The notes below the pieces were generated by a model. That model made no database searches. It was not told the origin of the DNA and saw only the letters and a list, made by a program, of their open reading frames with translations. A DNA stretch of 64,000 nt from positions 372,001 to 436,000 of the forward strand of contig NIVC01000175.1 of assembly GCA_002269645.1 (NCBI GenBank), given 5' to 3'. This document shows positions 35,609-63,400 of the stretch, in pieces. The first letter of the stretch is position 1; every line of letters begins with the position of its first letter. This DNA is from Macrostomum lignano (taxonomy: Eukaryota). Made by a program: the position numbers and the translations under genes.

Positions 35609-35672
35609 GCTGTCTGTCTGTCTGTCTAGCTGTCTGTCTGCCTGTCTGTCTGTCTGCCTGTCTGTCTGCCTC

Positions 35673-35711
<39 letters not shown>

Positions 35712-35717
35712 GCCCGT

Positions 35718-35754
<37 letters not shown>

Positions 35755-35758
35755 CGAC

Positions 35759-35795
<37 letters not shown>

Positions 35796-37437
35796 GCCTA
35801 TCTGTATGTTTGTCTGTCTGTCTGTCTGTCTGCCTGCCTGCCTGTCTGTCTGTCTGGGAGCTCCCTGTCAGTATGTAAAATATAGAAAACTCATAATATA
35901 TTAGTCTCACCTTAAAATTATTATTCTTAATCCGAACGTAGGTCTCCTTGAGCGAAGGCGATTCAAATGGCGGCCTACCTACAACTAGGGTGTAGAGAAT
36001 GCAGCCCAGAGACCAGACGTCCACCTCAAAGCTGTGACCCTGCTTGTTAAGCACCTCCGGGGCCAGGTAATTAGGCGTGCCGCACATTGTCTTCTTCTGT
36101 TCGCCGTCTCTGTTGACCTGCGTAGCCAGGCCAAAGTCGCCGATTTTCACCTGGATTGGGATATTTTTAACAGGTTAGCGACTGCCGAAAAAAACTGTTT
36201 TCAGACGCCAGTAAATCTCTCCAACCTATTTCTAATCCTATTTTTCTAACACTGGTTCCACTACGGCAACCTTATTCCCCTTCACAATCAATCCATCATT
36301 AACTTATTACGTAATCAAAAAATACTTCTTTAACACCGACTCTACCTCTCAACCTACTTTCCCAACACCGACTCTACCTCTTAACCTACTTCCCGAACAG
36401 ACTCTACCTCAACCTACTTTTTAAACGGACTCTACCTTTCAACCTACTTTTTCAACACTGACTCTACCTCCTCAAACTACTTTTCCTAACACTTACTCTA
36501 TCTCTCAACCTACTTTCCCAACACTAAAAATCTACCTGTCAACCTTCTTCCCTAACACTTACTCCCTTCTTCTCCAACACTGGCCCTACTACTCAACCTT
36601 CTTCCCATAACACATACTTTACCTCTCAACCTACTTTCCCAACAAAAAGTCTACCTCTTAACCTACTTTTTAACACTGACAACACTGACCCTACTTCTCA
36701 ACCTACTTTTTAAACACTGATCCTACTACTCAACCTACTTCCCCTAACACTTACTTTACCTCTTAACCTACTTCTCTAAAATATAAAACCTACAACATAA
36801 CCTACTTTTCTCAAGCAACAGCACTGCATCACAATTTACTTTTCTACCATCTGAATATATACTCCTAACGCAACTTTCAATATTTCAACTTACTCACCCA
36901 TAGTTTAGAATTGAGAAACACGTTTCCCAGTTTGAGATCGCGGTGAATAATCTTGTTGCTATGCAGATACTGGCAGCCGCTGACAATCTGTCTCATAAAG
37001 TACTGAGCCTCAGGCACAGTGACCAGCTTTCGCCTACGATGCAGCTCCATCAGGGAACGCCTTGAGCACAGCTCCAACAAGATGTACATGTTTTCCTGAT
37101 CGGCAAAACTATCGTAGAATTTCACCAAATGTTCGTGCGACAATTTCCGATGAATCTCGATCTCCTGAATCATCTTCTCTTTCTGCGAGTCTTTAACTAG
37201 AAGCTTTTTGGACACGATCTTGCAAGCCAGGGTGCGGCAGTCGCTAGCATCTGAGCTAGTCACCTCGTAGCAGAAAGCGAAACCGCCTTTGCCAAGAAAT
37301 TTGCCGCAATTGTAAGAAATTCTACTTTGTGAGTTCACAATCACGGCCGGAATTGTGGGATTCTTAGCCCGCTGTGCTGCTGCGGCATCCGCATTAGCCG
37401 GTACTGCCTTTGATGTGATTGGCATTGCTGCTTTCAT
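31991..37437 (-). CDS. plk1: Polo-like kinase 1 (polo), 639 aa; exons 37437-36898, 36150-35911, 35221-34751, 33917-33495, 32236-31991
   Basis: Kinase motifs [41 protein letters not shown]; polo boxes [18 protein letters not shown] and [13 protein letters not shown]. All four GT-AG junctions are phase 0 and restore contiguous PLK1 sequence. The first acceptor base of exon 4 could be 33902 instead. Confidence 0.95.
32335..33440. repeat. Complex minisatellite in plk1 intron 4, rich in TGAGTCA, with a 188-bp higher-order period
   Basis: 24-bp units AATGTGTCACTAACTGAGTCACTG, then blocks recurring at 32870/33058/33246. Confidence 0.93.
33985..34655. repeat. Minisatellite in plk1 intron 3, ~18-19-bp unit ATCTTCACAAATCCCCC
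   Basis: Tandem repetition. Confidence 0.95.
35410..35856. repeat. (CTGT)n microsatellite in plk1 intron 2
   Basis: About 450 bp of CTGT with variants. Confidence 0.97.
36330..36820. repeat. Degenerate ~32-bp minisatellite in plk1 intron 1 (AACACTGACTCTACCTCTCAACCTACTTTTCC)
   Basis: Recurring CAACCTACTT and ACTCTACCT motifs. Confidence 0.85.
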
Positions 37438-47348: not shown

Positions 47349-49473
47349 TCATTTAGGATTTAGGAATTTGTGCTTGAGCAGCTCCGACGTGTCTGCTCGC
47401 TTCTTCGGATCCCTCACAATGCACCTTAGATAAAACTCCTTGAGGCCAACCGAGAAATTCCCTTCAATTTGAGGCATCTCCCTTTTCTTGTCGACCATCA
47501 CTAAGGGAATTCGAAAACCGGGCACGCTCGAATTCGGAGGCTTCATGTGCGTCATCTCGAACACAGTGCAGCCGAACGCCCACACGTCAGTCTTGATGGA
47601 GTAAGGGATCGATGTTCCGTCTTCGTCCATGAACAGCTCGGGAGCCATGAAGTGCCAGGTGCCTTTTGCCTGATTTCCGGTCGTAAGGCCGCAGGTGCCC
47701 ATAAATTCCTTGGCTAGACCGAAGTCAATTAGCTTGATGACGCCATCGTGGGTGAGCATGATGTTGGAACACTTTATGTCCCTGTGCAGGATAGGTCCCT
47801 GCGGCTGACAATGCAAGAAATTAAGACCGCTGCAAATCTGCAATGTTAACATGAGCATCGAATGATCAATTGGAGTAGCGAATTTTAAGTTCACATTCAG
47901 CGAATTTGAAATTTACCTGTCTTGAGAAATCCATCACGCCTGACTCTTCAATTGGTTTCTCGTTCTGTTTCATCAGATCAAGGAGGCTGAGGCCGGAGAT
48001 GAGCTCAGTGAATATGCAGAAACCGTCGGATGTGACTTCACACTTGAGGAACAGTACAATGTTGGGATGCTTGACTGTCTTGAGTATCTCGATGCCTCTC
48101 TGCTCCAGCTTTAATTCGTTCTTCTCTCTCCAGGCGTCGCCGCTAACTGGAATAACCTTGACGGCCACGGTCTGGTACCGGTCAGTGAGGGCTTTGAAGA
48201 CTTTGCTGAAACCGCCCGCGCCTAAGAGCTGCGGTTTGTCGTCCTGTTTCACGAAGCTCCAGGAAGTGAATCCCGGATCCAGCGGTTTTGAGACTCTGTG
48301 AATTATCAATAAAATTTTATACTTAAGAGACTAAAGAGAATTATGCAACAGTGTTAGGCTGATTCCTTTGGTTCCTGAGCACGGCACATTTGCACAAAGG
48401 GTATACGGAAGTTCTTACTGTGCATCGTATCTCATGTACAAGCCCTGGACCCTACTTGGAGATTGTTTATTAACCTAACAACGAGTAGCATCAAATTAAA
48501 CTCACAAGCTTAGCGAGCTTTCAAATGTGCTGGTATCACCTAGCGTTTGGGAAGCTGGTGGCTCCGGCTTCGGTTTAACGACAGGTTGCGGAGGCGTCGG
48601 TTGAGCAGCTGGTAGCTCAAACCTTGGTTTAACAGCTGGTTTTGGAGGCGTCGGTTGAGTAGCTGATGACTCAAACCTTGGTTGAACGGCTGGTTGCGGA
48701 GGCAATGTTTGAGCAGCTGGTGGCTCAAACCTTGGTTTCACGGCTGGTTGCGGAGGCAACGTTTGAGCAGCTGGTGGCTGGTCAGCAGGTGGCGGCGTGG
48801 GCAACGGACGGGCAGCGAGCTGCGGAGGCTGAAGCAGAGGAGCTCCCGGCTGCCACTTTTGGCTGGCAATCCACTCCCGCTTACTGCTCTTCCATGGATT
48901 ATTGCTGCCCTTCTCCACCCAGTCAATCAGTGTTTCACCTTTGTTATTTCTTAAGCTGAACATCTCGGAGCCGAGGTGACTAGCAAGAAACTGAAGCGAC
49001 TCCACCGGCTGCAGCATCGCGGCCCAATGGACGGCTGTGTTACCTTCATCGTCAGGAATTGTGAGGCAGTCAGTGCCAAGCCTCTCAACTAGCCACCGGA
49101 GCGATGCATTCGTTTTGGTATTCTTAGCAGCAAAATGAGCCGCTTTATTTCCCAACACTTCAAAGAAATTGAGGCCGAGAAATTCTCTGGAGAACTCCAA
49201 CCACGAGTCGTCTTTGAACCATGCCATCAGATGAATGGGAGTCCAACCGTTGCTGTTCCTGCAGGTCAGACAGCTCTCTCCAAGTTTTTCTGTCAGCGCC
49301 TTGAGGCACTCCAGGCTAACTGACCATCTAGCTACGTGATGGCTCACTGACTGCTTCAATCCGCGATACTTGAACTCAATGTTGCTTTCGAGTCGAGCGC
49401 ACAGGCGCTCCAGTTCCCTGCTGTTTTCAACTTCAAACGCTGCTCTTATCTTTCGTTTGGTAAAGTAGCTCAT
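47349..49473 (-). CDS. Ankyrin-repeat + proline-rich linker + STE11/MAP3K-like Ser/Thr kinase (gene A), 611 aa; exons 49473-48506, 48295-47917, 47837-47349
   Basis: Ankyrin motifs GWTPIHLMA and GNTAVHWAA; kinase motifs [38 protein letters not shown]. Intron 1 is phase 2 (TT|GTGAGT ... CACAG|A) and intron 2 is phase 0 (79 nt), giving one open frame. Confidence 0.88.
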
Positions 49474-50209
49474 TGCGTTGACTCCACTGTTAACGGCTAG
49501 TTGGTTTAGTTTGGGGCTTTAGCGTTACTTGAAGAACTCGGAATTATGTAGATATAAGCTTCTTCTGCAGGAATACGGATGCTATACACCGAGACTGATG
49601 CTGTAAATGTCTCTCCTACTGCACTGAGCACTGTACACTTGTGAGCAAGTGAGGCAGACAATGTGAGCGCTTCTGTGCGTCGTTTCCGAGGTTCTATTCA
49701 ATTTGAGGTGAAAAAAACAGAGACGAAATTTCGGTAAAGAGAGACAAAACTAGCTCGTAAAAAATGCATTCCGTTGTTTTTCTTCGAGACAGAGACTGTG
49801 CAACCTTCTTGTGCTTTTGTTGCTTTACGTAAACATAGCTTGCTCGACAAGAGTTTTATATTTAGCTTTTTTGAGCTACAAATGTGTTTAGAAAAACTGA
49901 AGGCATTATAGAAAGAGCGAATGGTTTTCATATCAGAGTTTGCCTTTAAAAATATCTTTGATAGCTGCAGCTACATGTATCTGCAGTTATATAGAGTCTG
50001 TTACAGAGCCTACTACAGAAACTGCTACAGAGTATTTTAACAGTCTGAAAGAGCGCCTTCAGCTGTGACTATTTCTGTATCTGGCTTAATCAGAGGATAA
50101 TCGAACATAGTTTTAACATAATCAAAGACACTTCTACTTAAAAATAAGGATGTGATTTTGGTTTTAAGGTTATAACTTAAATTTACGTTTTCTCGCCAGA
50201 GGAAATTTC

Positions 50210-50370
50210 CCTGTCCCCATGACGTTTACCTCCTTGACCTCTGTCCTCATGACCCCCTTCCCCATGACCTCTGTCCCCATGACCCCTGTCTCTATGACCC
50301 CTTTCACATGACTTCTACCCCGATGATCTCTGTCCTCGTGACCCCTTTCCTTATGACCTCTGTCCCGGTA
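50210..50370. repeat. Short degenerate ~15-bp minisatellite (ATGACCTCTGTCCCC)
   Basis: About 10 copies. Confidence 0.8.
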
Positions 50371-52088
50371 ACAATAGATTTCAAATAATAAAAATTCTTA
50401 ATTATCTGAGCTGCTGCAGATGCAGTTCTCGAGACGACAGCACAGCTCTGAAACAATCAGCACTGGCATGAGCGCATCCGATTGTTCACACGCAGCCCAT
50501 TCTCACCATTTCTCCAGCAAGAATTTTCATTCATTTCACAATGTCTCAAAAAGCACTCCCAGTTCTCCATCGGCAGCTCAACCCACACAATCTCACTACA
50601 CACTGAGGCCATTCTCAACTGAGATCAACCGGCACCCCATTGGATAGGAGACAGCCAGCCAATCACAGCTCAGCCAGAGACAAGCACAGCTGACTTGACT
50701 CTGATTGGCTGGTCTGAGACTGCAGCTCTCAGGCCACCAGCATAAAGACGGTCTAACGAGCTGCCTCAACACTGGTGACGTAATAAGCCTGGCCTAAGCC
50801 TCACCTTGGATGACGTGCTGGGCGAGAGTCTGGAGTGAAAGGCTGCTGAGTCTCTCCGACGCTTGTCCGATTGTTGTGGTCGGGCCGAATGAATTCCTGC
50901 AACTGCAATTGAGACACTCAAGCTTTTTGTTCGCAACATACTACTGTTGCGCTTAAATGCAGCAGTAGCACCTGCAAAAATTATTCAAGTAGCAAAAGGT
51001 ATTAAGTAAAGAAATTGATCGTTGTTCAGCAGTAGACGATTTTGAAACGTCAATATGAGCCCTCGAGATAAGTTTGCCGACACAGACATGCTTACCCAAG
51101 CTGCACTGCCCTAAGAATGAGTACACTCCTATGCCTTCTTAAGAAGCTTCCTGGGGAGCCGTGAAACTGAAACACCCTGCAAGAAGTTTATCACAATAAA
51201 TAACTACTTGATCCAACCCAAACGCAGACTTCTGAGCATTGTTCTCTAGCTGCTCAGGTGTAATCATGTGCGCCCTCGATTAAATTTAGGAGTATCCTTT
51301 GGTAAGGAAAGCTTAAATATAGCTGGACTCTTTTTTATGGCTTGTGGCCACATGCCGGTATGTTGATGTGTCAGCAGCATATAGTACTCAGTGTCCCCAT
51401 GCAAATCACAAGATGTGATCTGTCAGCAGCATTAACGTCCGTGATTTTCTAACCCCACTGGACAAGCAGGTTATTATACAAATGCTGGCAATAGAAAATT
51501 GCTTCGAGTTGAATTTAACTCTACACGATGCTAATTGAACACACCATAGTGCTTAGGATGCATCCACGCCAACCAAACTCGAACAGAGCTCCATCAGGTG
51601 CACACTGATATTTCGATCCGCCACGCTCTGAAGGCCTCGTCCACCGAAATCTGAATTCTATACGGGATTTTTCGGGAAGTTTCTGTAATTCTCAGGATCT
51701 CTCTACTCCATTCAGTCTCGTATCTTTGAGTCCTGTAACAGCGTGTCGAAATCTGTGATTGTTTCTATTGATTTTCAAACTCGCGCGCACTCGTCATTCA
51801 TTGAAGGTTTCGACCGTAGAAGTTAATAATTGAATTTCCAAAGTCATGTATATAGGGGAGTTTGTTTTTATTGAAAGTTCCGCAAGTTTTAAGATTTTTC
51901 GGTGCATAGAAAGTGTTTGTTTGTTTAAATCAAGGACTTCTTAAAACGCAGGACGTTACAATCGCGAATTTTTTAAAGTTGGAGGTAAAATGGCGTAGTA
52001 AATCAGGCTTGTAGTTTTACGAGCTATTATTCAGCAATAAACAAAAATGTTCACCCTCTTTTTGGAAGAATTTCCTCCCTCAGTTGAG

Positions 52089-52150
52089 TGACGACAAATC
52101 AATTCAACAGTTCGACCTCAGACTAATGGTCAATGGGTAGTTGAAGGGTG
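52089..52150 (+). repeat. 62-bp direct repeat, copy 1 (copy 2 at 54857-54918)
   Basis: 58/62 identical to 54857-54918. Confidence 0.9.
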
Positions 52151-53534
52151 GGACGCTTGCTGAGAACAAGTCCATTTAACAAGAGAGTCCATGTTTGAGG
52201 AAGAAGCGATTTTAGAACAGTCTATTCACATGTTAGTTCACAAAATTCTGCCGAGAATAGAGTAGACATTTTGTCTGTTGCTGAGTATATACACATTTCC
52301 CTTGTTCCTTGTATATGTCTGTCTAGTCTTACTATGGTCATAATGGAACTCTATGGTCATAATAGCTCGTAGGCAAAAAATTATGAGCAAACAACCAAGC
52401 CTATAGTTTCCATGACAACAAGGAAAAAAATTGCAAACAGTACAAAACTATTATTGAGTTGATCAGAACATTCTCAGCTGAAACTTTGTTAAATCATCAG
52501 GGCTGTCAAATCTGCCCCTGAAAACTTGGTCATCTATGAAGCTGCAGCGAATTAGTGTACGAGCTAAAGCTAAGCTAAGTCTGGACAATTGCGGGCACCG
52601 AAAAGCGACCTGAAAAATCCCAGCTGCACTAGCCTCCCGCTCATCAGAAACTCGTTGTTTCAACAAGTGATTTTCAGTTCGAAAAGAAAGATGAATAAAA
52701 ACATTTTATTAAAAACTTAGATCAAAGAGCACTTCTATAAAGAGAGCAACAATATAACAATACGAGCGTAAACTGAACTTCAACAAAAGATTTTTACGAG
52801 CTACATAGGATATCGGATGGGATAAGAAACGCTCGTAGTGTTGTGCTACAGGCCGGATCGCAATTCTAGCTGTCCCAGAGGACGAGCCGTAGATGGCGTC
52901 AGTCAACTGGCCGGACTGACTTCGGACTCTGAGCAGGGGATCGCGTCAGGAGACTTAATCAGCCCGTCCCTATTGCACGGATTAATTCCCGCCAGTCCCT
53001 CAAATAAGAAAGACACGCGACTCACTCTGTTTCTTCGGGCAACAGCGGTGGCGGCAGCAGGTGTGACTTCTGTCAATTTCTGGCGAACGTTCAAGCACAG
53101 TCTGGCTTCTGAGTAAGTTCAGTTCAGTAAGTTTAGCATTGAAATAGCGTCTTGCACAACTCAACCAAGAAGATGCCTCCCCTACTGCCGCTCCTGCATT
53201 TATTTATATTTGTGCTAGCTGATTAAGCCCTGGGTATCGCCACCCCAGGCCCAGCTAGGCAAAATTACGAGTCTTATAAAAGTCTTACAAGGTCGTACAA
53301 AACCGGGGTCGCGATTGGAGGAGAAAAACACAAACCGATTGGCTGGACCGCCAACCAATCGCAGGGCAAGGGAGGGGCGCACTGGGGCCGCAGCCAGCCA
53401 AAACCGGCTGGCTCAACAGACAGTGGGGTTGGGTGCAGCTGGGGGGGGGGTCTGACGCAGACAGAATGGGTGGTTTGACGCGAGCAGAATGGGGGGCGGG
53501 TTTGCGCAGGAGGGCGGCTGGGAGGGGTGGGAGT

Positions 53535-54813
53535 CATGGATGAATAATATAACTGGATCGCCAGAAGCTCGATTTTTTGGTCCTAGCCATAGACAAGCAC
53601 CAGCATCACAAGAAGCTCAGAATGCCGTACTTTCACACATAGACAAATAGCCGCTGCAGAAGCTGCAAACCTTTATTTATGAAGCATTCTATTTTATGTC
53701 CAAGCACATGCTCGCAATATATGCAGGGCGGCAAAAGATGGCTTCGCGAGATGAATAAGGACGTCAGAATTTGTGCTGCAATCGGATGCCTATCCAAAAG
53801 TGGACAAGGCACGAAACCTGTCACCCTTTTTTCTTATCCAATCGGTGATCCGTATCGACTAGCGCAGTGGAACAGCAATGTGCAAGCAAAGTCACATTTC
53901 AAATTCGGAGCTCGTAAGTTCCTTTGTGAGCTGCACTTCGAACAACGAGACATGCAGGCTCATGGGAGGAGCAAGCGACTGATGACTGGCGCAGTTCCGA
54001 AGCTTGAGTGGACTAAGCTTGAACCGCAAGAGCTCACTGATTTCCACGATCCAAACTCTTATGCAAACGAAGCTACTGGAGACTGTGAGTTTGAGATGCC
54101 GATGCCTGTCAGTTGCAGCGCGGCAACCACACGCACATCAGTTGACCCACCACCAAACACCCGACAGCGCCTGTTGATGCGGCTAAAGCACAAGAAGCGC
54201 ACGATTAAGACTTTTGGTCCACGCGTTGCAAAATGGAAAAGTACCGAAGCGACCTTAAAACATCAATATTTTCTAGTGCAGGCGATTTCTAAGAAATATC
54301 TTTGCATTAGGTTGCGGCATGTACTTCGGAGGCTTAATGCTGTGAACACAACAACTGTGCGTCAGATGCTAACAAAAAAAATTATTTTCATGGGTCAGTG
54401 ACTTCAAATTAGCATTGTGCGGGTGACGCCTTGAATTTATTGTCTTTACTTGACTCTCATTTGTCTTGCGCGGTTTGCTTGCAACTCATTTGGCTGTTTG
54501 TTTTCGCCTTTTATTGTTTGTTTGTTTGCTGTCTGTCTACGTGCTTACTTGCCTACTTTCGTGTCTGTTATGTATTAATTCCTTTACATATTCGTTTTCT
54601 TCTTTGCTTGCCTTCACATTTGCAATATTTTCACTTATCCTACTAAATATACCTTATAAGGTACTTATAAATAAAAATTTGCAGCTTCTGCAGCGGCTAT
54701 TTGTCTACGTGTGAAAGTACGGCATTCTGAGCTTCTTGTGATGCTGGTGCTTGTCTATGGCAAGGACCAAAAAAATCGAGCTTCTGGCGATCCAGTTATA
54801 TTATTCATCCATG
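53535..54813 (+). mobile_element. Non-autonomous P-element-superfamily DNA transposon, 1,279 bp, with ~146-bp TIRs and an 8-bp TSD
   Basis: TSD GTGGGAGT at 53527-53534 and 54814-54821. TIRs 53535-53680 and 54667-54813 differ by 4 substitutions and 1 indel. The terminus CATGGATGAATAATATAA resembles the Drosophila P terminus CATGATGAAATAACATAA. Internal THAP ORF. Confidence 0.93.
53751..54401 (+). CDS. THAP zinc-finger protein, 216 aa from the ATG at 53751 (ORF open from 53679); truncated P-transposase N-terminus with no catalytic domain
   Basis: C2CH THAP signature CAAIGC...LFSYP...W...LCELHF...AVP at the N-terminus, then a basic helical segment; ends well short of a transposase core. Confidence 0.85.
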   Translation: MNKDVRICAAIGCLSKSGQGTKPVTLFSYPIGDPYRLAQWNSNVQAKSHFKFGARKFLCELHFEQRDMQAHGRSKRLMTGAVPKLEWTKLEPQELTDFHDPNSYANEATGDCEFEMPMPVSCSAATTRTSVDPPPNTRQRLLMRLKHKKRTIKTFGPRVAKWKSTEATLKHQYFLVQAISKKYLCIRLRHVLRRLNAVNTTTVRQMLTKKIIFMGQ

Positions 54814-54856
54814 GTGGGAGTGCAATGCCGGGCACACTTGACCGAGAGCCAGAGAT

Positions 54857-54918
54857 TGACGACAAATCAATTCAACAGTTCGACCATAGACAAATGGTCA
54901 ATGGGTGGTTGAAGGGTG
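54857..54918 (+). repeat. 62-bp direct repeat, copy 2
   Basis: 58/62 identical to 52089-52150. Confidence 0.9.
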
Positions 54919-55074
54919 CAAATGTACCCGGGCACAACAATAGAAAGAAACAGTAACTGAAAAAATTATCATAAGCCTCTTAGTCTGCTTCTTAGTCGCA
55001 TTTAGAATTTAAATAAATATTAAAAATTTGAAGAGATCGAAAAGAGGGAAGCTCCCGGCTGCATGCTTCTTTCG

Positions 55075-55931
55075 TCATCCACCCGTTAGGAACTCGTGCT
55101 GAAGCAGTTCCTGTGCTAAGTTTCTCTCCTTGCGGTCCTTGGTGGTGCAGCGGCTGTAGAAATCCCTCAGCTGTGCGGACCGGCCGTCCGGCAGGGCGGG
55201 GGCGCCATTGTTTGCGAGGCTCCAAGCAACTTGAAAAATGTTTTGAGCGTCTCTGAACGGCCTCGCGCCAGACACCATCTGGAAGACCGAGCAGCCGAAC
55301 GCCCAGATGTCCGACTCTCTGCTGTACTGCATGCTGTCCGACTCTCCCGCTCCAAGCAGCTCTGGCGCCATGAAGTTCAGAGTGCCTTTGGGGGCTGCTT
55401 TGGAGTCCGAGATGTGGCTGACTGACTGCTCCAGCTTGATTGATAGGCCGAAGTCGATCAGCTTGATTCGCGAGTTGTCAGCACAAACAATTATGTTCGA
55501 GCAGTTGATGTCTCTGTGGATCACGGGCGGCTGCCGGCTGTGCAGGTAGAGCAGCGCGCGGCAGATCTGCGAGCGGTCGGTCAGTGAGCAGTCATCATTC
55601 ATGGGAACATGGAACAGGAGCATCGATAAACCTCTCCAAGCTTCGGCCGTCCAGCAGCTCCATGAACACAACAACTGTGGCGGGCTCCGGCTGAGCGATG
55701 TACAAGAACCTGACGATGTTGGGATGCAGCAGTCGGCACAGGTTTCTCTCGCTCTCAATAGCTCTGTGGATCTCTGTCCTCACAGAGGGCAGCTCATCAC
55801 CGAGCTGCACAGTCAGTTTGAGTGTCTTAGCAGCGCACCTGACGCCTGTGTCAGTGAGCACCTCGTAAACTTCGCCGAAGCCTCCCCTTCCGATGAGGCG
55901 AACTGCATCCCATCGCTCCAGATATGGGCAT
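55075..55931 (-). pseudogene. STE11/MAP3K-like kinase module (B); N-lobe from 55931 and C-lobe 55566-55075, with the alpha-E junction and donor apparently deleted; probably the last exons of the gene continuing at 56154-57998
   Basis: GRGGFGEV, CAAK, HPNIV, HRDINCSN, DFG, APE, DIWAFGC; close paralog of 58944-59918. The N-lobe frame stops at 55595 and is out of frame with the C-lobe. Confidence 0.75.
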
Positions 55932-56153
55932 CTACGAGCGTATGATGGGGTTCCGGACAACTTTTAAATTATAAAGAAACGCTAGATCGATCAGATTATC
56001 TTTTAAAAAGTTTTAGGAAGCCCCTCATTTAATAGATTTACACTACAAAACTTTAGTAGCTAGCCGCTTGTTTTAAAACATAGCTACTCGTAGTATAGCT
56101 AGAAGCAAACCAACTACCAGTATTTCGTCAATACTCCAAGCAGATCAACTTAC

Positions 56154-57998
56154 CCTTCTGTCGAGCGGTCCAGCAGCTGCACCAACTCTAAATTTTGATG
56201 TTGCTCCGCTAGCTGCGTACAAGTCAGACCTCGACCGTCTCGATGACTCGGATCTGCTCCTTTGAGTAACAAAATCTTTGCAGCAGTCAAATGACCCGCT
56301 TCGCACGCTCGTGACAGAGCGGTCCGACTCTGACTATCTACGGAATTCACTGATGCACCGAGATCCAACAGTTTCTCAATAAGTTCATGATAATTTCCAT
56401 CTGCTGCCAGCATGAGAGCAGTGGCTCCCGTGTTGTCTGGCAAATCGACATGCTCTCGGCTGAATGTCTCGTCATTGGTCAGTCTTACGGAAAGAGTGAT
56501 ATGCCGCTCAGAGATACAGAGACGGAGCATCTGCGTGATCTGAGCTGGCTGCATTCTAGACTGTACTGGAGACAGAGTGTCAGTTAAAAAAGAGTTCATG
56601 CCCTCAGTAGCCAGCGAGGCAAGGAAGCTCAGGATGGGGCCAGATTCTAAGAGCCAGTCAGGCTCGAGACCAAGAAAAGCAACGATGTTTTCTTGATGGA
56701 GACGAGAGCAGGCCATGACTGCGCATCTGCGACGAAAAAGTAGTTTTGATTCCGGGCTTTGAATGCACTTTAGAACCTTTTTGATAACATGCAACTTTTG
56801 AGACTCTTCAGAAGATTCCACTGTCTCCATGCAGAACTTGACGGTAAGATCTTGGTCTGAAACTTTTTGTACCAGAAATTCAACATCTTTCCATCGAATT
56901 TTGCCGGCAGCAGCTTTTGCTGCTCTAATACAGCAGTAGTCTTTCGTAACTTGGTCAGCGACTTCCTGCACAAGCAACATAGCAACTTCGAAATGACACT
57001 TTTTTGCCGCAAACTTCACTACTTTTTTGCAGCACTGATCTTTCACGGTTTGGTCCGGGATTTTCTCCAACAGAATTTTAACTACTTCCAGCTCATCTTT
57101 ACTTTCGTTTTGAGCAGGATTTGCTACCGCCGTGGACTGAGCACCTCCGGTTTTTTTAGCTATTGTATCTATCAAAAATGACACCACCTCCCACTGATTT
57201 GATTGGTCGCCAATAGCATCAGAGACTGCATCAGGCATATGTTGTGCAGTTAAAGGGTCATTTGATATCTTCAATTGAGTCAGTTGTTGTTCAGTATCGT
57301 CTGTCTTCTGTAAATAATCCAGTGTCTGCTGTCTCTGCTGCTGCATTGCACGGACATCGCACTGATTCCAGACTTGGCTCACTTGAGTAAATGTAGCCCG
57401 GTTTTCCGGGTTGACTTGAGCAGTCATGCGCATAATTTCTATGGCTTTGTCCCGCTCTTGAGATGGCTCAGGATTGCAACCAATGATCCTTCCTTGAAAG
57501 CTGTCAAAGTGTTTCCCCTCCAACACCATCCTTTTATAATCATCCTTGGCACCTTCATCACTGAAGCATTCTCTGACAGAAAACTCAGCAAGAACCTCAA
57601 CTATTAGGATTCCGTAGAGATATCGATCTCCATATTTATCGGGCTGTTTGCAAGTGTCAGCATATAATTCAGGCAATAGACGTTCGAGTCCTCTCTTCTT
57701 TTCGAATTCCCAGGTGTCAGCTGTCATCACGGAATGAGGAAGACTCTTTGCCAGTCCAAAATCAGCTATCTAAAAGAAGCAAAGAGCAGGCTGTTTAACT
57801 TGAAATATCAAATTACCTGTAAATCAATTTTCAAAGCTAAATTACCTTAGCATTTAAATGAAAATCAATTAGAACATTATCGGCCGACAAGTCTCTGTGA
57901 AGGATAATCTTCTCTTGGTTCTGTCCTTCTTGAAGGTACTGGAAACCATAGGAAACTTGAAGCATCCATAGGCTTTTGAGGCAAAGACGAGGCCTTTC
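56154..57998 (-). CDS. TKL-like (probably degenerate) kinase C-lobe + helical Cys-containing repeats + canonical ankyrin repeats (D); exons 57998-57846 and 57769-56154; 5' end unresolved
   Basis: HRDLSADN, NAK|IADFGLAK across a 76-nt phase-0 intron, and ankyrin repeats TGATALMLAA and QSRTALSRAC. Ends in the consensus donor GAAGG|GTAAGT (phase 2), which overlaps the apparent stop codon. Confidence 0.8.
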
Positions 57999-58943
57999 CT
58001 GTAAATTTTTGTGCAAACATGGTGACAGCATGATTCTAATACCCAATAAGCATAAGCAAGTGACGTATTTAAGTTTTGCTAATTTTTCGCAGAGAATACG
58101 AGCAAAGCGCACGCATACGCCTTATAAAACGATGAGAGCGTTCAGATAGTTTGGACAGCAGAATCTTGCGCACACTGCTGCACAATAGCAAACCAAACTG
58201 AAACAATTTCAATCTCAGCTACACCTTTCGTGCATTCTTCGAATGTTCAGACTCGTAGAGTATTATCTTTCCAGCCGCGAGCACAACTCACAGAAAGTAC
58301 AGTCCACAAGTAAAGTTGCTTGTAAGCTTCATCTGCAGCGAATACGAGATTATGACTTCGTTATTTCTTGTTCAAGCGATCTGTTGCTGTTGCTCACACT
58401 GCAGGCACTTTTACCGGCGTAGACAGGCGCGCAGTCCGCGTTTCGTGCATGCTGCATGTATGCTCGCGCCAGAGTCTTGAGCTATGCGCTCTGGGTTGAC
58501 GCTGATGTCCTTTTCTTTAGGAACTTTCAACAGCGTCAATTTTACTGGATCATACTGTACTCTGAAGATGATTGCCATGGCAATGAGGATATGAAACTTG
58601 CATGGTCTAACCACATTGTAAAAAAGAGCAAATACAGTTTAGAAGGATGGATGTGATATTAGACTCGTGGATAAATGATGGTTTGTGAATTCTACGCTTG
58701 GAGTTCCGTCCGTAGAAAGGAATTTTTTAAGAATTTGTTTAGAAAAACTTATCATGGCCATTCGGAAACAAAATGTTATTGACAAAATTTGTATTTTTAG
58801 GAGATTATCAGATGTTTTAATCACAACTGGTGTCATACTCGCGTTGTACGTTTGTAATACTCTTAAAATGTTTATGCAATAAAACTGTAAAATATGGTTC
58901 TTCCACAGCAGGAAACCAATCAAAATCAATCAACCAATCAAAG

Positions 58944-60664
58944 TCATTTTCTGTCGCCAAATAGTCCACCAAACTTTCTCTTTGAACTTTGCAACCTCTG
59001 ATTAGTCAGAAACTCGTGCTTCATCAGCTCCTGGGCTGGCAATCTCTTCTTGCATTTGTTGGCGGTGCATCGGCGGTAGAAATCCTTGAGCTCAGCTGAG
59101 CAGCCGTCAGGCAGAGTGGGTGCTCCACTGCTTCTCAGTCGCTCCGGCAGAGTCCAGCTGTTCTTGTGCTCAGCAAAAGGCCGCCCACCAGTGGCCATCT
59201 GGAAGACTGAGCAGCCGAACGCCCAGATGTCCGACTCTCGACTGTACTTTGGAGTGTCGGAATCGTTTGGAGCGAGCAACTCCGGTGCCATGAAACTCAA
59301 AGTGCCTTTTGGCGAAGCAGAGGACGCTGAGATGTGACTGACTGACTGCTCCAATGTGACTGACAAGCCAAAGTCGATTAGTTTAATGAGCATTGTGTTC
59401 GTCAGTACAATGATGTTGGCACAGTTGAGATCTCTGTGGATTACAGATGGATCTCGGCTGTGCATGTAGTGCAGAGCGTTGCAGATCTGCAATCATAGAA
59501 ATTACAGATTATTTAAGTTTATTGCAGTAATCAGATTGTGTCAGAAGTACTTTTTAGAAGTACCTGCTTGCTGAAATCTCGTATTTTGTTTTCATCCAGC
59601 GCTGTCTTATCGATAAAAGCTTCCAAGGTTTTTCCGTCCAGCAGCTCCATGAACACAACGACTGTGGCGGGCTCCGTCTGAGCGATGTACAAGAACTTGA
59701 CAATGTTGTCATGTTGCAGTTGACACAGGTTCTTCTCTCTTGAAACCACTCTTTCGATCTCATTGCTCACCAAGCCCTGTTCTGCACCGAGCTGCACAGG
59801 CAGTCTGAGTATCTTAGCAGCGCACGTGACGCCTCTGTCAGTGCGCACTTCGTGAACTTCGCCGAAGCCTCCCCTTCCGATGAGGCGAGCTGGATCCCAG
59901 CGCTCCCGAAATGGGCATCTATGATGGGGTTGAGACAATAAATTACGAATGAATGGGTATAAAACATGAACAAAAGGCAGCGCTTACTCGATAGCGACAG
60001 CTGTAGACAGTTGGGCAGCGAGCGACTGAGCTCCCTGCGGCTGCTGACGCCCGGCAATCTAGGCCTGCTTGCTCTCTCTTCTGTTTGTGTTGGTGTCTTT
60101 CTCAATCCAGTCAATAACTGTTTCGTCCTCGCAGTTCTTTAACTCAAAAAACTCCCATCCAAATTTGGCCAACAAGAACTTTAACGTATTTAGTGACTGA
60201 TACCTGGCAGAATAATGAATGGCCGAGTTTCCGAGTCTGTCAGTGGCGACAAAGTACTCCTTGCCAAGCTCCTTTGCTATCCACCTTAGCGACGAGCTGC
60301 TCGATTCGTTTGTAGCGGCATAGTGAACCACTGTCCCGCCCGAGTTCGCTGGCACCAAAAAGCACTCGCTGCCCAAAAAGTTTCGACAAAGCTCCATCCA
60401 AGTTTCGTCCTTATACCTCGCCGCCAAGTGCACAGGAGTTTCTCCTGTAACGTTTCTGCAAGCCAGACATTCATCTCCGAATTTGTCTACCAGCTTTCTG
60501 AGGCAGAGCAGATCAACAGGATGACTGGCCACGTGATGCGCTAATAAGGCATTCAGCGAGTATACCTGGAATTCGACGTTGCTATCGAGTGAATCGTATA
60601 AACTTAGCAATTCGTCGCTATCTTTCGCCACCAACGCCGATCGGAGCTTTGACTCAATCTGCAT
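58944..60664 (-). pseudogene. Ankyrin-repeat + STE11/MAP3K-like kinase (gene C) with one in-frame TAG at 60061-60059; exons 60664-59988, 59918-59564, 59486-58944
   Basis: Ankyrin domain is paralogous to gene A. Donor GA|GTAAGC and acceptor CATAG|A are phase 2; intron 2 is 77 nt, phase 0, at Q|IC as in gene A. Kinase motifs GRGGFG, HRDLNCAN, DFG, APE. The TAG aligns with a Trp of gene A. Confidence 0.8.
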
Positions 60665-61990: not shown

Positions 61991-63400
61991 CTAATGTAAT
62001 ACTCGTACGCTCGAGGTACGTCCCAATACGTGACTTACCGCTGGAAATGTGCACGTAGGCATTTCGCTGTCCGAATGGTAGCCAGCTTCTTCATTTCTGT
62101 CAGCTGGAGCCTCGACGCCAGCGCTCGTTCCGTTGATGGCAGGATTAACTGCTACGGCCGCCGCTGTAGCCATCCTGACTGGACGACGGGTAGCATATAC
62201 GGCTCTCCCATCCCTTCGGTTGTTGCCAAGCAGGCGGAGACTCAAATGCTGGGCAGAGACACGAGTTCGACGCTGCAGGTCGGACAGGGTTCGCGTCGAA
62301 TTGCGTCTGACCGCCCTGAGCCGACAGGCGTAGAGCAGTGGGTTCAACAGTGTGTACGCGACCATGAGCAGCTCCAGGTAGTGGTCCAGCCTCTCGTGCT
62401 TCATCAAACTGTCCAATAGACTCTCGAGTTGGCGCCTGTTTTGAGCATGCAAGAAGTTGGTGGCAAACTGGGCGATGAAGAACGGCAGGAAGAGAGCGTA
62501 GAACTGTAGCAGGATGGCGATTGCAGTGAGCACTCCTCGTTGATTATGCCGCTGCAGGCTCAGCGCTCGGTTGCTCCTGTTAAGCCGCATCACCCGGTAG
62601 ATGGTGGCGATGATGCGGCTGTAGCAGAAGGTCACCGTGGCGCAGGAGGCAACGAACACGCAAAGGACAATCTGCAGGCTGTTGAAATTCACGGCGCTTC
62701 TACCGACACAGCAGAAGGCGGTGCTGAAACCGGCGTCAATCTCTTTACGGCAAATTCTGCGCAAGCTGAACAACTCTTCGTCATCTTGAATAGTTAAGTT
62801 GGTACTGTTGACCCTCGTCAGGCGCAATGTCAGGTAGCTGTGGTAAAGGACAGGCAGAAGACCAAACACGGCGGAGACAGCACAGCTGCCAACTAACAAT
62901 CCACGCATGTACCGAACAATAAAAGCAGTTCGATAGGACAGAGCTCGATTAACGAATAGGTATAGATCGACAGCAATCAGGGTCAGAGTGAACAGAGTGA
63001 CACTATGCGAAGATCGAAGGCTTTCTTGAGTCAGGTAGCTCAGACAGAAACCTTGAGGTTGCTGCGACACTTCAGAGGTTGCATTGAGGGACAGTTCCTG
63101 TGGGCTGGAAATGTTACTAGACAGTCGAATTTTTATCGGGATGTACTTTAAATCAACTCCTAGGCGGCTGCTTTCCATGTGCTGCTTGAAGCTTAGGTCC
63201 GATATGACCAGGAGAGCGGTAACAGCGTCCGTCAGAAGCAGGTGTCTTATCAACAGAAGATTGTAGATGGAGGCGCTGCTGACACAGCGAATGCCGCGCA
63301 ACACGTAGAAGATCCAGGCGTTCAACAGGACGCTCAGGCTGCACACTGCGAAAGAAGCGTGGCCTAGGATCTCGGGTTCCGAAGCAGTTGAAGCAGACAT
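61991..63400 (-). CDS. Orphan class A (rhodopsin-like) GPCR, 469 aa, coding region intronless
   Basis: Seven hydrophobic segments; TM1 Asn (LLNAW), TM2 Asp (LLLTD), TM3 AVDLY, TM5 Tyr (FCYSRI), TM6 Pro (LFLP), TM7 NPLLY. A 5'-UTR intron 63507-63405 has consensus sites and an in-frame TAA just upstream. Confidence 0.9.
   Translation of the reverse strand: MSASTASEPEILGHASFAVCSLSVLLNAWIFYVLRGIRCVSSASIYNLLLIRHLLLTDAVTALLVISDLSFKQHMESSRLGVDLKYIPIKIRLSSNISSPQELSLNATSEVSQQPQGFCLSYLTQESLRSSHSVTLFTLTLIAVDLYLFVNRALSYRTAFIVRYMRGLLVGSCAVSAVFGLLPVLYHSYLTLRLTRVNSTNLTIQDDEELFSLRRICRKEIDAGFSTAFCCVGRSAVNFNSLQIVLCVFVASCATVTFCYSRIIATIYRVMRLNRSNRALSLQRHNQRGVLTAIAILLQFYALFLPFFIAQFATNFLHAQNRRQLESLLDSLMKHERLDHYLELLMVAYTLLNPLLYACRLRAVRRNSTRTLSDLQRRTRVSAQHLSLRLLGNNRRDGRAVYATRRPVRMATAAAVAVNPAINGTSAGVEAPADRNEEAGYHSDSEMPTCTFPAVSHVLGRTSSVRVLH

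What the first reader, a model, noticed from the sequence alone, without database searches (positions are those of the whole stretch)
47349..60664. Tandem cluster of ankyrin-MAP3K-like kinases built by exon shuffling onto a shared two-exon kinase cassette
Three same-strand kinase modules each enter through a phase-2 intron just before the Gly-rich loop and share a split at Q|IC in helix E (a 77-79-nt phase-0 intron in A and C; only the acceptor survives in B). Their upstream parts differ: ANK + Pro repeats (A), ANK + short linker (C), and TKL kinase + helical repeats + ANK (D/B) (seen). Canonical STE11/MEKK kinases do not carry N-terminal ankyrin arrays (established). Variable repeat sensors on a constant signalling kinase, with birth-and-death lesions and a TE insertion, resemble a lineage-specific innate-immune or stress receptor family (inference). 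This is the best candidate here for an undescribed system.
Basis: partly seen in the sequence, partly recalled or inferred. Interest (0 to 1): 0.75.

Follow-up and report, generated by a model that had tools for sequence, protein, structure and literature searches.

The report
Flatworm ankyrin-kinase genes built from exon modules
This stretch of the flatworm Macrostomum lignano holds three neighbouring genes of a large flatworm-only family in which ankyrin-repeat exons and a two-exon kinase unit have been repeatedly duplicated and recombined; one gene is intact here, two are damaged, and what the family does is still unknown.

Summary
Window 47349-60664 (minus strand) is Macrostomum lignano DNA with three genes, C, D/B and A. 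Each ends in a two-exon kinase unit entered through a phase-2 intron and split by a phase-0 intron at Q|IC.

- **State of the three genes:** A is intact. C has an in-frame TAG. D/B has lost a kinase exon and a 15-codon-plus-donor segment. Both lesions are absent from a 90-96% identical duplicate locus.
- **Exon shuffling is supported family-wide:**
  - The same two introns occur in all six paralogs mapped.
  - 17 of 23 other introns are phase 2.
  - The kinases form two 100%-supported clades, and each clade sits behind both atypical and canonical ANK arrays.
  - D's ANK exon also precedes Mab-21-like nucleotidyltransferase genes, ending at the same place and phase.
  - A caspase-like exon is attached through another phase-2 intron.
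  - Kinase units and ANK exons also duplicate on their own.
- **Not supported:** the label "STE11/MAP3K". The kinases are STE-group-like but unassignable, and the B/C clade has HRDxN in place of HRDxK.
- **Still inference:** an immune or stress role rests only on domain associations.

The family is annotated as hypothetical proteins. I rate it a new variant of known kinds.

The parts
48506..49473 (-). Gene A exon 1: start codon, N-terminal header, atypical ANK module and Pro-rich linker. The exon ends in phase 2.
   Evidence: The ORF has Ank_2/Ank_4 hits. The gene model is intact at 611 aa. It is 99% identical to the transcript-based GenBank protein BOX15_Mlig015280g2. AF2 gives pLDDT about 90 for residues 1-206.
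48553..48779 (-). In-frame minisatellite in the A linker: 54-nt (18-aa) unit, 4.2 copies.
   Evidence: Tandem Repeats Finder score 293, 83% matches. AF2 gives pLDDT about 30 over residues 207-324.
48296..48505 (-). Gene A intron 1: 210 nt, phase 2, GTGAGT..CACAG. This is the joint between the ANK module and the kinase unit.
   Evidence: The same intron is present in L001.
47917..48295 (-). Gene A kinase exon 1, from the Gly-rich loop to aE, ending FSRQ.
47838..47916 (-). Gene A intron 2: 79 nt, phase 0, at Q|IC.
47349..47837 (-). Gene A kinase exon 2 ([23 protein letters not shown]..stop).
59988..60664 (-). Gene C exon 1: header, atypical ANK module and short linker, with a premature in-frame TAG at 60059-60061.
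   Evidence: The duplicate locus L001 has TGG (Trp) at that codon and four copies of a 42-nt linker unit.
59919..59987 (-). Gene C intron 1: 69 nt, phase 2, GTAAGC..CATAG.
59564..59918 (-). Gene C kinase exon 1 (type-2 clade).
59487..59563 (-). Gene C intron 2: 77 nt, phase 0, at Q|IC.
58944..59486 (-). Gene C kinase exon 2 (HRDLNCAN, DFG, APE, stop).
57846..57998 (-). Gene D exon with the catalytic loop of a divergent N-terminal kinase-like domain (HRDLSADN). The exon upstream of it, present in L001, is missing here.
56154..57769 (-). Gene D large exon: DFG and C-lobe of the first kinase-like domain, degenerate ANK ('helical') repeats and canonical ANK. It ends ..LLDRSTEG in phase 2, and a TAA overlaps the donor.
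   Evidence: It is 48-54% identical to the N-terminal exon of the Mab-21-like genes P0124, P0126 and P0128.
55932..56153 (-). D->B intron: 222 nt, phase 2, GTAAGT..CGTAG.
   Evidence: The UniProt models P0121 and P0122 use the same join.
55622..55931 (-). B kinase exon 1 (type-2 clade), truncated after ..LERFID.
   Evidence: Homology to L001 breaks at about 55626.
55567..55621 (-). 55-nt remnant of the Q|IC intron of B, ending CTCGCAG. The donor and about 15 codons are deleted.
   Evidence: L001 keeps ..HNRPLDELTIRDFSKQ and an intron of about 444 nt.
55075..55566 (-). B kinase exon 2 (ICRALLYLH..HRDINCSN..stop), mosaic relative to L001.
   Evidence: dS against L001 is 0.37, versus 0.03 for B exon 1.
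53535..54813 (.). Non-autonomous P-superfamily DNA transposon between B and A: 150-bp terminal inverted repeats, 8-bp target duplication GTGGGAGT, THAP ORF at 53679-54401 (+).
   Evidence: It lies inside a 2.7-kb segment (52375-55088) that L001 lacks.

Best explanation
What it is. The region is a tandem cluster (C, D/B, A) of a Macrostomum-restricted, expanded family of cytoplasmic ankyrin-repeat kinases.

Shown: how the genes are built. Each gene is assembled from exon-sized modules joined by phase-2 introns:
- an N-terminal ANK exon whose 3' end is an in-frame minisatellite linker;
- optional mini-exons;
- a two-exon kinase unit split by a phase-0 intron at Q|IC in helix E.

Shown: the modules have been duplicated and recombined independently.
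- There are two kinase clades. Type 1, to which A belongs, has HRDIKxSN. Type 2, to which B and C belong, has HRDxN.
- Each clade occurs behind both an atypical 68-aa double-ANK array with a conserved header and canonical ANK arrays.
- D's ANK exon is also the first exon of Mab-21-like nucleotidyltransferase genes.
- A caspase-like exon can follow the kinase unit.

Shown: state of this copy. A is intact and constrained. C carries a nonsense codon. D/B has lost one exon and part of the B kinase. Both are intact in a 90-96% identical duplicate locus. This is birth-and-death turnover between redundant copies of a recently duplicated genome.

Inferred: how the protein works.
- The ANK array is a folded protein-binding module.
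- It is tethered by a disordered linker of about 118 aa to a STE-group-like Ser/Thr kinase.
- Binding of a partner to the ANK array would recruit or release the kinase.
- Type-1 kinases are predicted to be active.
- Type-2 kinases, which lack the catalytic-loop lysine, may be weak or non-catalytic partners.

Weaker inference. Given the company the modules keep, the pathway may be a cell-death, stress or innate-defence type of signalling.
For: Organism and family
- Gene A is 99% identical to M. lignano BOX15_Mlig015280g2.
- About 44 M. lignano clusters at 90% identity match, at least 20 of them with distinct GenBank locus tags.
- The next-best hits are non-Macrostomum kinases at E 1e-33 or worse.

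Gene structure
- The window introns were read directly.
- The phase-2 entry and the phase-0 Q|IC intron are present in all six transcript-based paralog models mapped: P0001, P0002, P0017, P0035, P0037 and P0044.
- A phase-2 intron links the kinase unit of P0044 to its caspase-like exon.
- P0002 has a 29-aa linker mini-exon flanked by phase-2 introns; P0006 and P0007, which are otherwise near-identical through the linker, go straight from ..TAASAG to AKKQL.. without it (protein sequences; their loci were not mapped).
- Of 23 introns other than Q|IC in 8 genes, 17 are phase 2.

Phylogeny
- The kinase tree has two clades with 100% bootstrap support.
- The atypical-ANK carriers C and P0017 are nested among type-2 genes with canonical ANK arrays, with 84.5% support for excluding P0043 and P0044.
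- Identity between the two types is 38% for the kinase but 42.5% for the ANK module. For deep pairs within type 1 it is 54% and 41.5%.
- Canonical ANK arrays give no detectable match to the ANK exons of A or C.

Module reuse
- D's ANK exon is 48-54% identical to the first exon of Mab-21-like genes. Those exons end 'LLDPSxx' plus a phase-2 intron, as D ends 'LLDRSTEG'.
- Locus L004 has three kinase units in tandem after one ANK region.
- Locus L003 has two ANK exons before one kinase unit.

Duplicate locus L001
- It has the same gene order, with C and B intact.

Constraint (small counts)
- The A kinase has 0 nonsynonymous and 5 synonymous differences.
- omega is 0.37-0.48 for A-ANK, C and D.

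Fold
- AF2 gives pLDDT about 90 for the ANK region, about 30 for the linker, and a confident kinase.

Transcript support
- The GenBank models derive from RNA-seq assemblies.

Motifs
Against: - No reads or cDNA were examined for this copy.
- The transcript-based GenBank annotation calls only gene A in the duplicate locus, not C or D/B.
- The D-to-B join rests on predicted UniProt models. D could also end at the TAA that overlaps the donor.
- The ANK tree does not resolve where the ANK modules of C and P0017 came from: {A,C} has 53% support and {C,P0017} 13%. The shuffling argument therefore rests on character mapping, module reuse and rate decoupling, not on a significant topology test.
- Only neighbour-joining trees were available.
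- Some database models are chimeric (P0123), and P0038 may be too.
- Nothing tested here bears on function. Large lineage-specific expansions are common in this partly duplicated genome.
Confidence: 0.75

Rival explanations
1. Plain tandem whole-gene duplication followed by divergence. On this view no modules were exchanged, and the different N-termini are diverged versions of one ancestral ANK region.
For: - A and C share a homologous header, ANK module and exon structure.
- Over all pairs, ANK and kinase identities correlate (r = 0.90).
- The ANK tree is too poorly resolved to reject congruence.
Against: - The atypical array is scattered across the kinase tree.
- D's ANK exon is closer to Mab-21 genes (48-54%) than to the ANK region of B's nearest kinase relatives (31% to P0035).
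- A caspase-like exon is appended to one member.
- Arrays of kinase units alone and of ANK exons alone exist.
- Canonical ANK arrays do not detectably match the atypical ones.
Confidence: 0.1
2. D and B are two separate units in this copy. D is a kinase-like/ANK gene that ends at its own TAA. B is a 5'-truncated, broken kinase unit, a dead duplicate. The 'dual-kinase' protein would then be an artefact of gene prediction.
For: - The TAA stop overlaps the GG|GTAAGT donor at 56153.
- B is damaged here.
- There is no transcript-based GenBank model for D/B in L001.
- P0123 shows that predictors build chimeras across this cluster.
Against: - In L001 the reading frame stays open and in phase from D's ANK exon into an intact B kinase (P0122).
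- Canonical ANK followed by a type-2 kinase through a phase-2 intron is the transcript-supported layout of P0035 and P0044.
- B has no ANK exon or start codon of its own.
Confidence: 0.25
3. The family has no defence or stress role. It would be a neutral or tissue-specific (for example reproductive) expansion in a recently duplicated, repeat-rich genome, and the caspase-like and Mab-21 associations would be incidental.
For: [quoted passage not shown]
- Kinase-domain and ankyrin-repeat superfamilies are among those recurrently frequent among lineage-specific duplicates across flatworm genomes.
- Two of the three genes here are broken.
- The caspase-like exon of P0044 appears, by eye, to lack the catalytic His and Cys.
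- No expression data were found.
Against: - The intact copies are under purifying selection.
- Motifs and intron structure are conserved across at least 20 loci.
- Association with cell-death and nucleotide-signalling domains recurs.
Confidence: 0.45

Closest known systems
TNNI3K (cardiac ankyrin-repeat kinase) and ILK
   Same: An N-terminal ankyrin array is followed by a C-terminal kinase or pseudokinase domain in a cytoplasmic protein (my knowledge of these families).
   Different: - Those are TKL-group kinases and conserved single-copy genes.
- Here the kinase scores best with STE-group kinases, and TKL members such as BRAF score lower.
- This family is lineage-restricted, expanded and modular at the exon level.
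STE-group kinases: SLK/LOK and GCK-III (MST3, MST4, STK25) of STE20; ASK1/MAP3K5 and MEKK2 of STE11
   Same: These are the nearest kinase domains by sequence and by fold, at about 30% identity, with TM-score 0.83 to ASK1. The subdomain VIII motif GTxxFMAPE is similar.
   Different: - There is no orthology: 131 bits over 265 aa at best. The PLK1 gene in the same window gives 191 bits over 167 aa to human PLK1.
- None of these kinases carries an ANK array.
- Type 2 has Asn in place of the catalytic-loop Lys.
RIPK4/ANKK1 and DAPK1 (kinase followed by ankyrin repeats, in inflammatory and cell-death signalling)
   Same: The first half of D has the same order, a kinase-like domain followed by ANK repeats. 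A relative of that kinase (P0127) has a weak Death-domain hit.
   Different: - D's kinase-like domain is not recognisably RIPK- or DAPK-like. Its best PDB hits are CTR1, JAK2 and MEKK2 at 36-40 bits.
- It appears to lack an N-lobe.
- It is followed by a second kinase.
Platyhelminth ANK-caspases and the M. lignano 'kinase pro-domain' caspase (Genome Biol Evol 2024, PMC11463336)
   Same: The M. lignano caspase with a kinase-like pro-domain described there (no identifier given) has the architecture of P0044, a type-2 family member: ANK, kinase and a caspase-like exon.
   Different: That paper treats it as a single odd caspase. The ANK-kinase family, its exon modules and its clusters are not described there.
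Lineage-specific, domain-shuffled expansions of death-fold, kinase and repeat proteins in invertebrate innate immunity (amphioxus, sea urchin, cnidarians; my knowledge)
   Same: They share tandem clusters, variation in repeat number, new domain combinations and pseudogenes.
   Different: No immune expression or function is known here. No TIR, NACHT or DEATH domain occurs in the window genes themselves.
Clustered variable-exon loci (protocadherins, UGT1A)
   Same: Tandem same-phase modules could in principle be spliced in alternative combinations, for example one ANK region before three kinase units in L004.
   Different: No evidence of alternative use was obtained. Here most ANK exons have their own kinase unit.

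Membership tests
Eukaryotic protein kinase superfamily (active Ser/Thr kinase) | Gly-rich loop, beta3 Lys, aC Glu, HRDxKxxN, DFG and APE. | tested here: met
   A and all type-1 members have GxGGFG, VAVK, HRDIKxSN, DFG and MAPE. Pfam Pkinase E 7e-32.
Eukaryotic protein kinase superfamily (active Ser/Thr kinase), applied to type 2 (B, C) | Catalytic-loop lysine (HRDxK). | tested here: not met
   All 13 type-2 sequences have HRD(I/L)N. The other motifs are kept. Whether they have activity is unknown.
STE11 / MAP3K (MEKK, ASK) | The kinase domain is closest to STE11 members rather than to other STE or non-STE kinases. | tested here: inconclusive
   - Type-1 profile: SLK 187, MST3/LOK/MST4 175, ASK1 and MEKK2 163 bits.
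- Type-2 profile: WNK1 125, MEKK2 124, TNIK 122.5, PAK1 117, ASK1 112 bits.
- Foldseek ties ASK1, MST3 and MAP4K4.
STE11 / MAP3K (MEKK, ASK) | Phosphorylates and activates a MAP2K. | not testable with these tools
   This needs a biochemical assay.
STE20 (GCK/SLK/PAK) | Closest kinase-domain relatives, and the subdomain VIII signature GTPxWMAPE. | tested here: inconclusive
   Type 1 scores best against SLK and GCK-III, by 12-24 bits over STE11. The motif is KGTPYFMAPE in P0002 and [10 protein letters not shown] in A. Type 2 shows no preference.
Ankyrin-repeat proteins | Tandem ANK repeats of about 33 aa forming a helical solenoid. | tested here: met
   Ank_2/Ank_4/Ank hits occur in the upstream exons of A, C and D. 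The AF2 model of A residues 1-206 is all-helical with pLDDT about 90.
TKL ANK-kinases (TNNI3K, ILK) | Kinase domain of the TKL group. | tested here: not met
   TKL structures such as BRAF score 97 bits against 131 for MST3. Neither TNNI3K nor ILK is among the top 60 hits.
Exon shuffling (modular gene assembly) | Module borders coincide with introns of one phase, so modules are symmetric. | tested here: met
   A phase-2 intron precedes every kinase unit examined, and another follows the unit in P0044. There are 2-2 mini-exons in P0002 and P0124. Of 23 non-Q|IC introns, 17 are phase 2.
Exon shuffling (modular gene assembly) | The same module is found in otherwise unrelated gene contexts. | tested here: met
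   D's ANK exon occurs in kinase genes and in Mab-21-like genes, with the same exon end. The type-2 kinase occurs behind three kinds of N-terminus. A caspase-like exon follows the kinase in P0044.
Exon shuffling (modular gene assembly) | Statistically supported incongruence between the trees of the modules. | tested here: inconclusive
   The kinase clades have 100% support, but the ANK tree does not place C and P0017 with support (53%, 46%, 13%). Rate decoupling is suggestive.
P-element superfamily DNA transposon | Terminal inverted repeats, 8-bp target-site duplication and a THAP DNA-binding domain. | tested here: met
   150-bp TIRs that are 96% complementary, a GTGGGAGT duplication on both flanks, and THAP E 5e-11. 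The 240-aa ORF has no hit beyond the THAP domain (residues 32-109), so the element is non-autonomous.
Innate-immune receptor or sensor family | Induced by or required for the response to pathogens, or direct ligand sensing. | not testable with these tools
   Only indirect signs were found: expansion, clusters, pseudogenes and association with caspase-like, Mab-21 and weak Death modules. No expression data were found.

The most novel reading that the evidence does not exclude
The phase-2-compatible tandem modules form a combinatorial system. They comprise ANK exons, kinase units, Mab-21-like nucleotidyltransferase exons and caspase-like exons. By recombination, and possibly by alternative or inter-genic splicing within clusters (for example one ANK region before three kinase units, or two ANK exons before one unit), a flatworm would generate a diversified repertoire of cytoplasmic ANK 'sensors'. 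These would be wired to kinase, cGAS-like or caspase-like outputs, making a lineage-specific innate defence or cell-death network.
Probability: 0.12. Interest if true: 0.85.

Novelty: new variant of a known kind. Interest (0 to 1): 0.55.

Why it matters
If the modular reading is right, this is an unusually clean animal example of exon shuffling still in progress. It has a single intron phase at all joints and module-only tandem arrays. The same ANK exon feeds three different catalytic outputs.

It would also define a large flatworm-specific signalling family of at least 20 loci that is currently annotated only as hypothetical proteins.

M. lignano has transgenesis (PMC5730564), and RNAi is used in it (my knowledge). 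The functional question of stress, cell death or defence versus neutral expansion is therefore directly testable. So is the question of whether the HRDxN clade is catalytically active.

Tried and rejected
- A Biopython bootstrap NJ run timed out. I replaced it with my own numpy NJ.
- ANK-module trees (N-part, C-part and concatenated) did not resolve the origin of the ANK modules of C and P0017. I do not claim significant tree incongruence.
- I looked for an N-lobe exon of D in the window with P0122 and P0127. The aC-to-hinge exon of L001 has no counterpart in the window. A degenerate Gly-loop-like ORF piece at about 58.5 kb remains unproven.
- I tested whether L001's B exon 2 was converted from the neighbouring C. 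The pattern is mosaic, but C is only about 71% identical in the patch, so the donor is unidentified.
- I scanned L002 for a tandem cluster. It holds only one gene with a 14.8-kb intron.
- Literature searches gave nothing on the family itself: by locus tag, for cGLR plus Macrostomum and for kinome plus Macrostomum.
- Foldseek could not separate ASK1-like from STE20-like.
- I considered TE-captured gene fragments as the source of the copies. I rejected this because of intact ORFs, conserved introns and motifs, and omega below 1.
- Close relatives (37% identity or more) of the atypical ANK module are all from M. lignano. The weaker hits are a mosquito protein, a bacterial MAG protein and two unnamed ENA proteins, all long with many matched stretches (5 to 18 in those I looked up), which I read as generic ANK similarity.

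Full report
**What the sequence is**

[quoted passage not shown] The protein I assembled for gene A is 99% identical to GenBank BOX15_Mlig015280g2. A 22-kb stretch of GenBank scaffold NIVC01000251.1 (locus L001) aligns to window 37.5-60.5 kb at 90-96% identity, with the same gene order. The published assembly is known to hold 180 Mb of such duplicated blocks. L001 is therefore a duplicate or allelic copy and serves as an internal control.

**Checking the observation**

All features lie on the minus strand. Pfam finds kinase halves and upstream ANK repeats in three places. Reading the junctions gives the following.

| Gene | Exons | Introns | State |
|---|---|---|---|
| A | 49473-48506, 48295-47917, 47837-47349 | 210 nt, phase 2; 79 nt, phase 0 at FSRQ\|ICSG | Uninterrupted, 611 aa |
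| C | 60664-59988, 59918-59564, 59486-58944 | 69 nt, phase 2; 77 nt, phase 0 | In-frame TAG at 60061-60059 between ANK and kinase |
| D/B | D: 57998-57846, 57769-56154; B: 55931-55622, 55566-55075 | D->B 222 nt, phase 2; only a 55-nt tail of the Q\|IC intron | B kinase and D N-lobe damaged |

- D's large exon ends ..LLDRSTEG with the donor GG|GTAAGT. The acceptor CGTAG|A opens the B kinase.
- In B..LERFID is followed by only 55 nt ending CTCGCAG|ATCTGC. About 15 codons, the donor and most of the intron are gone, and the two halves are out of frame.
- The A linker is an in-frame 54-nt minisatellite.

**What the duplicate locus adds**

- In L001, C has TGG where the window has TAG, and four copies of a 42-nt linker unit instead of one.
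- B is intact in L001 (..ERFIHNRPLDELTIRDFSKQ, then an intron of about 444 nt, then ICSALHYLH..).
- D in L001 has an additional upstream exon (MGELSQHESFVRIL..RLRME) with no counterpart in the window.
- B exon 2 differs between the copies at dS 0.37, against 0.03 for B exon 1, with a mosaic pattern. This suggests gene conversion from an unidentified paralog.
- A 2.7-kb segment (52375-55088) is present only in the window.
- That segment contains a non-autonomous P-superfamily transposon at 53535-54813. It has 150-bp TIRs, the 8-bp duplication GTGGGAGT and a THAP ORF.

In this copy, then, A is intact, C is a nonsense allele and D/B is damaged twice. The lesions are copy-specific.

Differences between the copies are few but point to constraint. 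The A kinase has 0 nonsynonymous and 5 synonymous differences. omega is 0.37-0.48 for A-ANK, C and D.

**The family**

- About 44 M. lignano protein clusters at 90% identity match A. At least 20 have distinct GenBank locus tags. The next-best hits are MST-like or other kinases from unrelated organisms at E 1e-33 and worse.
- A neighbour-joining tree of 45 kinase domains (270 columns, 200 bootstraps) puts all the Macrostomum sequences together. It splits them into two clades, each with 100% support.
- Type 1 contains A. Type 2 contains B and C.
- A and C kinases are 33% identical. C and B are 67% identical. B and P0035 are 80% identical.
- Type 1 keeps every catalytic motif. All 13 type-2 sequences have HRD(I/L)N instead of HRDxK while keeping the Gly-rich loop, beta3 Lys, DFG and APE.

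**Which kinases they resemble**

- A alone matches MST3/STK25/SLK best (131 bits), then ASK1 (109).
- A type-1 profile gives SLK 187, MST3/LOK/MST4 175, and ASK1 and MEKK2 163.
- C alone gives MEKK2 98, ASK1 95 and WNK1 95.
- A type-2 profile ties WNK1, MEKK2, TNIK and PAK1 at 117-125.
- Foldseek with an AlphaFold model of A ties ASK1, MST3, MAP4K4 and MST4.
- By contrast, a PLK1 gene elsewhere in the window matches human PLK1 at 191 bits over 167 residues.

The family is STE-group-like, but it is not an ortholog of any known kinase and is not specifically STE11.

**Evidence for exon-level modularity**

1. *Shared introns.* I mapped six transcript-based GenBank models onto their loci.
   - Every one has the phase-0 Q|IC intron (77-523 nt) and a phase-2 intron directly before the kinase unit.
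   - In P0044 a further phase-2 intron joins the kinase to a caspase-like exon, so the unit is symmetric.
   - P0002 has a 29-aa mini-exon between two phase-2 introns; the proteins P0006 and P0007 go straight from ..TAASAG to AKKQL.. without it (their loci were not mapped).
   - Counting the two Mab-21-like genes as well, 17 of 23 introns other than Q|IC are phase 2. The usual share in animals is about a fifth to a quarter (my knowledge).
2. *Two kinds of ANK module.*
   - The atypical kind has a conserved header (..KLRAALEAGDSEEL..) and 68-aa double repeats (..AHFAA.N..SNS.LKWLV.ELG.DCLTVPD..GNTAVHLAA..). A, C, P0017 and most type-1 genes have it.
   - The other kind is a canonical ANK array.
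   - Both kinds occur with both kinase clades. In type 1 the canonical-array genes P0036 and P0037 are basal. In type 2 the atypical-array genes C and P0017 are nested among canonical-array genes.
   - Canonical arrays do not detectably match the ANK exons of A or C, so the atypical array is a complex shared character.
   - The ANK modules of type-2 carriers are as similar to type-1 ANKs (42.5%) as deep type-1 pairs are to each other (41.5%). Their kinases are much less similar (38% against 54%).
3. *D's ANK exon is reused.* It is 48-54% identical to the first exon of four Mab-21-like nucleotidyltransferase genes. In two of these, which I mapped, the exon ends LLDPSxx followed by a phase-2 intron, just as D ends LLDRSTEG.
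4. *Modules duplicate alone.* L004 has three type-2 kinase units in tandem (period about 1.3 kb) after one ANK region. L003 has two header-bearing ANK exons before one unit.
5. *A junction at the exon borders.* P0038 joins a type-1-style ANK/linker exon to a type-2 kinase exactly at the exon borders (..TAASAG|PEGPPLLERWDAV..). It is a predicted model and may be chimeric.

**Limits of that evidence**

- The ANK tree (186 columns) does not place the C and P0017 modules with support. I do not claim a significant topology conflict.
- Only NJ was available.
- The D-to-B join is supported by an open, in-phase frame in L001 and by two UniProt models. It is not supported by the transcript-based GenBank annotation, which calls only A in that locus.
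- D also has a TAA overlapping the donor, so D alone may be a product.

**How it probably works**

The AlphaFold model of A shows three parts:
- a confident helical ANK domain (residues 1-206, pLDDT about 90);
- a disordered Pro-rich linker (207-324, pLDDT about 30);
- a confident kinase whose activation loop is flexible.

No signal peptide or membrane segment is apparent by eye. The simplest mechanism, which is inference, is a cytoplasmic kinase whose ANK array binds a partner or regulator. This binding would localise or gate the kinase. Repeat number and linker length would be the fast-evolving variables.

Type-1 kinases should be active. Type-2 kinases lack the catalytic-loop lysine and may be weak or non-catalytic. 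D/B would pair a degenerate kinase-like domain with such a kinase.

**Is it an immune or stress family?**

Nothing here tests that. The circumstantial points are these.
- The family shows lineage-restricted expansion, clusters, repeat-number variation and pseudogenes.
- One type-2 member (P0044) carries a caspase-like exon. A published survey notes an M. lignano caspase with a kinase-like pro-domain, sister to the flatworm ANK-caspases. By eye, though, that exon lacks the catalytic His and Cys.
- D's ANK exon is shared with Mab-21-like (cGAS-fold) genes.
- A relative of D's first kinase has a sub-threshold Death-domain hit (E 0.007).

Against this, the genome is partly duplicated and such expansions are common there. 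I found no expression data. I put the defence, stress or cell-death reading at roughly one in four to one in three.

**Novelty**

ANK-repeat kinases (TNNI3K, ILK, RIPK4/ANKK1, DAPK1) are known kinds, and so are domain-shuffled lineage-specific expansions. This family differs from them in three ways:
- the STE-like kinase behind an N-terminal ANK array;
- the HRDxN clade;
- the uniform phase-2 joints that link ANK exons to kinase, Mab-21-like or caspase-like exons.

Its members are annotated only as hypothetical or 'protein kinase domain-containing' proteins. I rate it a new variant of known kinds, of moderate interest. The interest would be higher if the modules prove to be used combinatorially or in defence.

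Noticed in passing
window 53535-54813: A non-autonomous P-superfamily DNA transposon. It has 150-bp terminal inverted repeats that begin CATGGATGAATAATATAAC, the 8-bp target duplication GTGGGAGT, and an internal 240-aa ORF (53679-54401, +) whose only domain hit is THAP. It sits in a 2.7-kb segment that the duplicate locus lacks.
   Followed up: yes
window 35626-37437 (-): Two exons of a Polo-like kinase 1 ortholog (191 bits to human PLK1). This is a conserved housekeeping kinase next to the lineage-specific cluster.
   Followed up: partly
window 61991-63400 (-) and 9340-11748 (+): A single-exon rhodopsin-type GPCR ORF (7tm_1, E 1e-12) lies just upstream of gene C. A sodium:neurotransmitter symporter-like ORF (SNF, E 7e-13) lies further away.
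   Followed up: no
L004 16125-19659 (NIVC01000875.1): Three type-2 kinase units stand in tandem (period about 1306 bp) after a single canonical ANK region. The GenBank model P0035 reads through two of them.
   Followed up: partly
L003 87-4141 (NIVC01004735.1): Two header-bearing atypical ANK exons stand in tandem, joined by a phase-2 intron, before one type-2 kinase unit (P0017). The first has frame breaks.
   Followed up: partly
L007 6001-11335 and L008 6001-9022 (P0124, P0126): Mab-21-like (cGAS-fold) nucleotidyltransferase genes have an N-terminal degenerate-ANK plus ANK exon homologous to D's. A GS..DSDID motif is present. ANK-fused Mab-21 proteins in a flatworm may merit their own study.
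   Followed up: partly
L005 11583-12266 (P0044 last exon): The caspase-like exon attached to a type-2 kinase hits Peptidase_C14 (48 bits). By eye it has LAAKAG where caspases have LSHG, and HTLAN where they have QACRG. It may be a pseudo-caspase.
   Followed up: partly
P0127 C-terminus (relative of D's first kinase-like domain): This protein has two divergent kinase domains and a C-terminal segment with a sub-threshold Death-domain hit (E 0.007, 16.9 bits against a cut-off of 22.6).
   Followed up: partly
window 50209-50366; L001 2207-2885: A 15/30/45-nt tandem repeat (CCCCATGACC-rich) lies in the A-B intergenic region. The duplicate locus has a 680-bp (ATAG)n microsatellite between C and D that is absent from the window.
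   Followed up: no
window 55075-55566 vs L001 6376-6860: B kinase exon 2 is mosaic between the two copies (57-93% identity per 60-nt block, dS 0.37), while the flanks are 95-96% identical. This looks like gene conversion from an unidentified paralog.
   Followed up: partly
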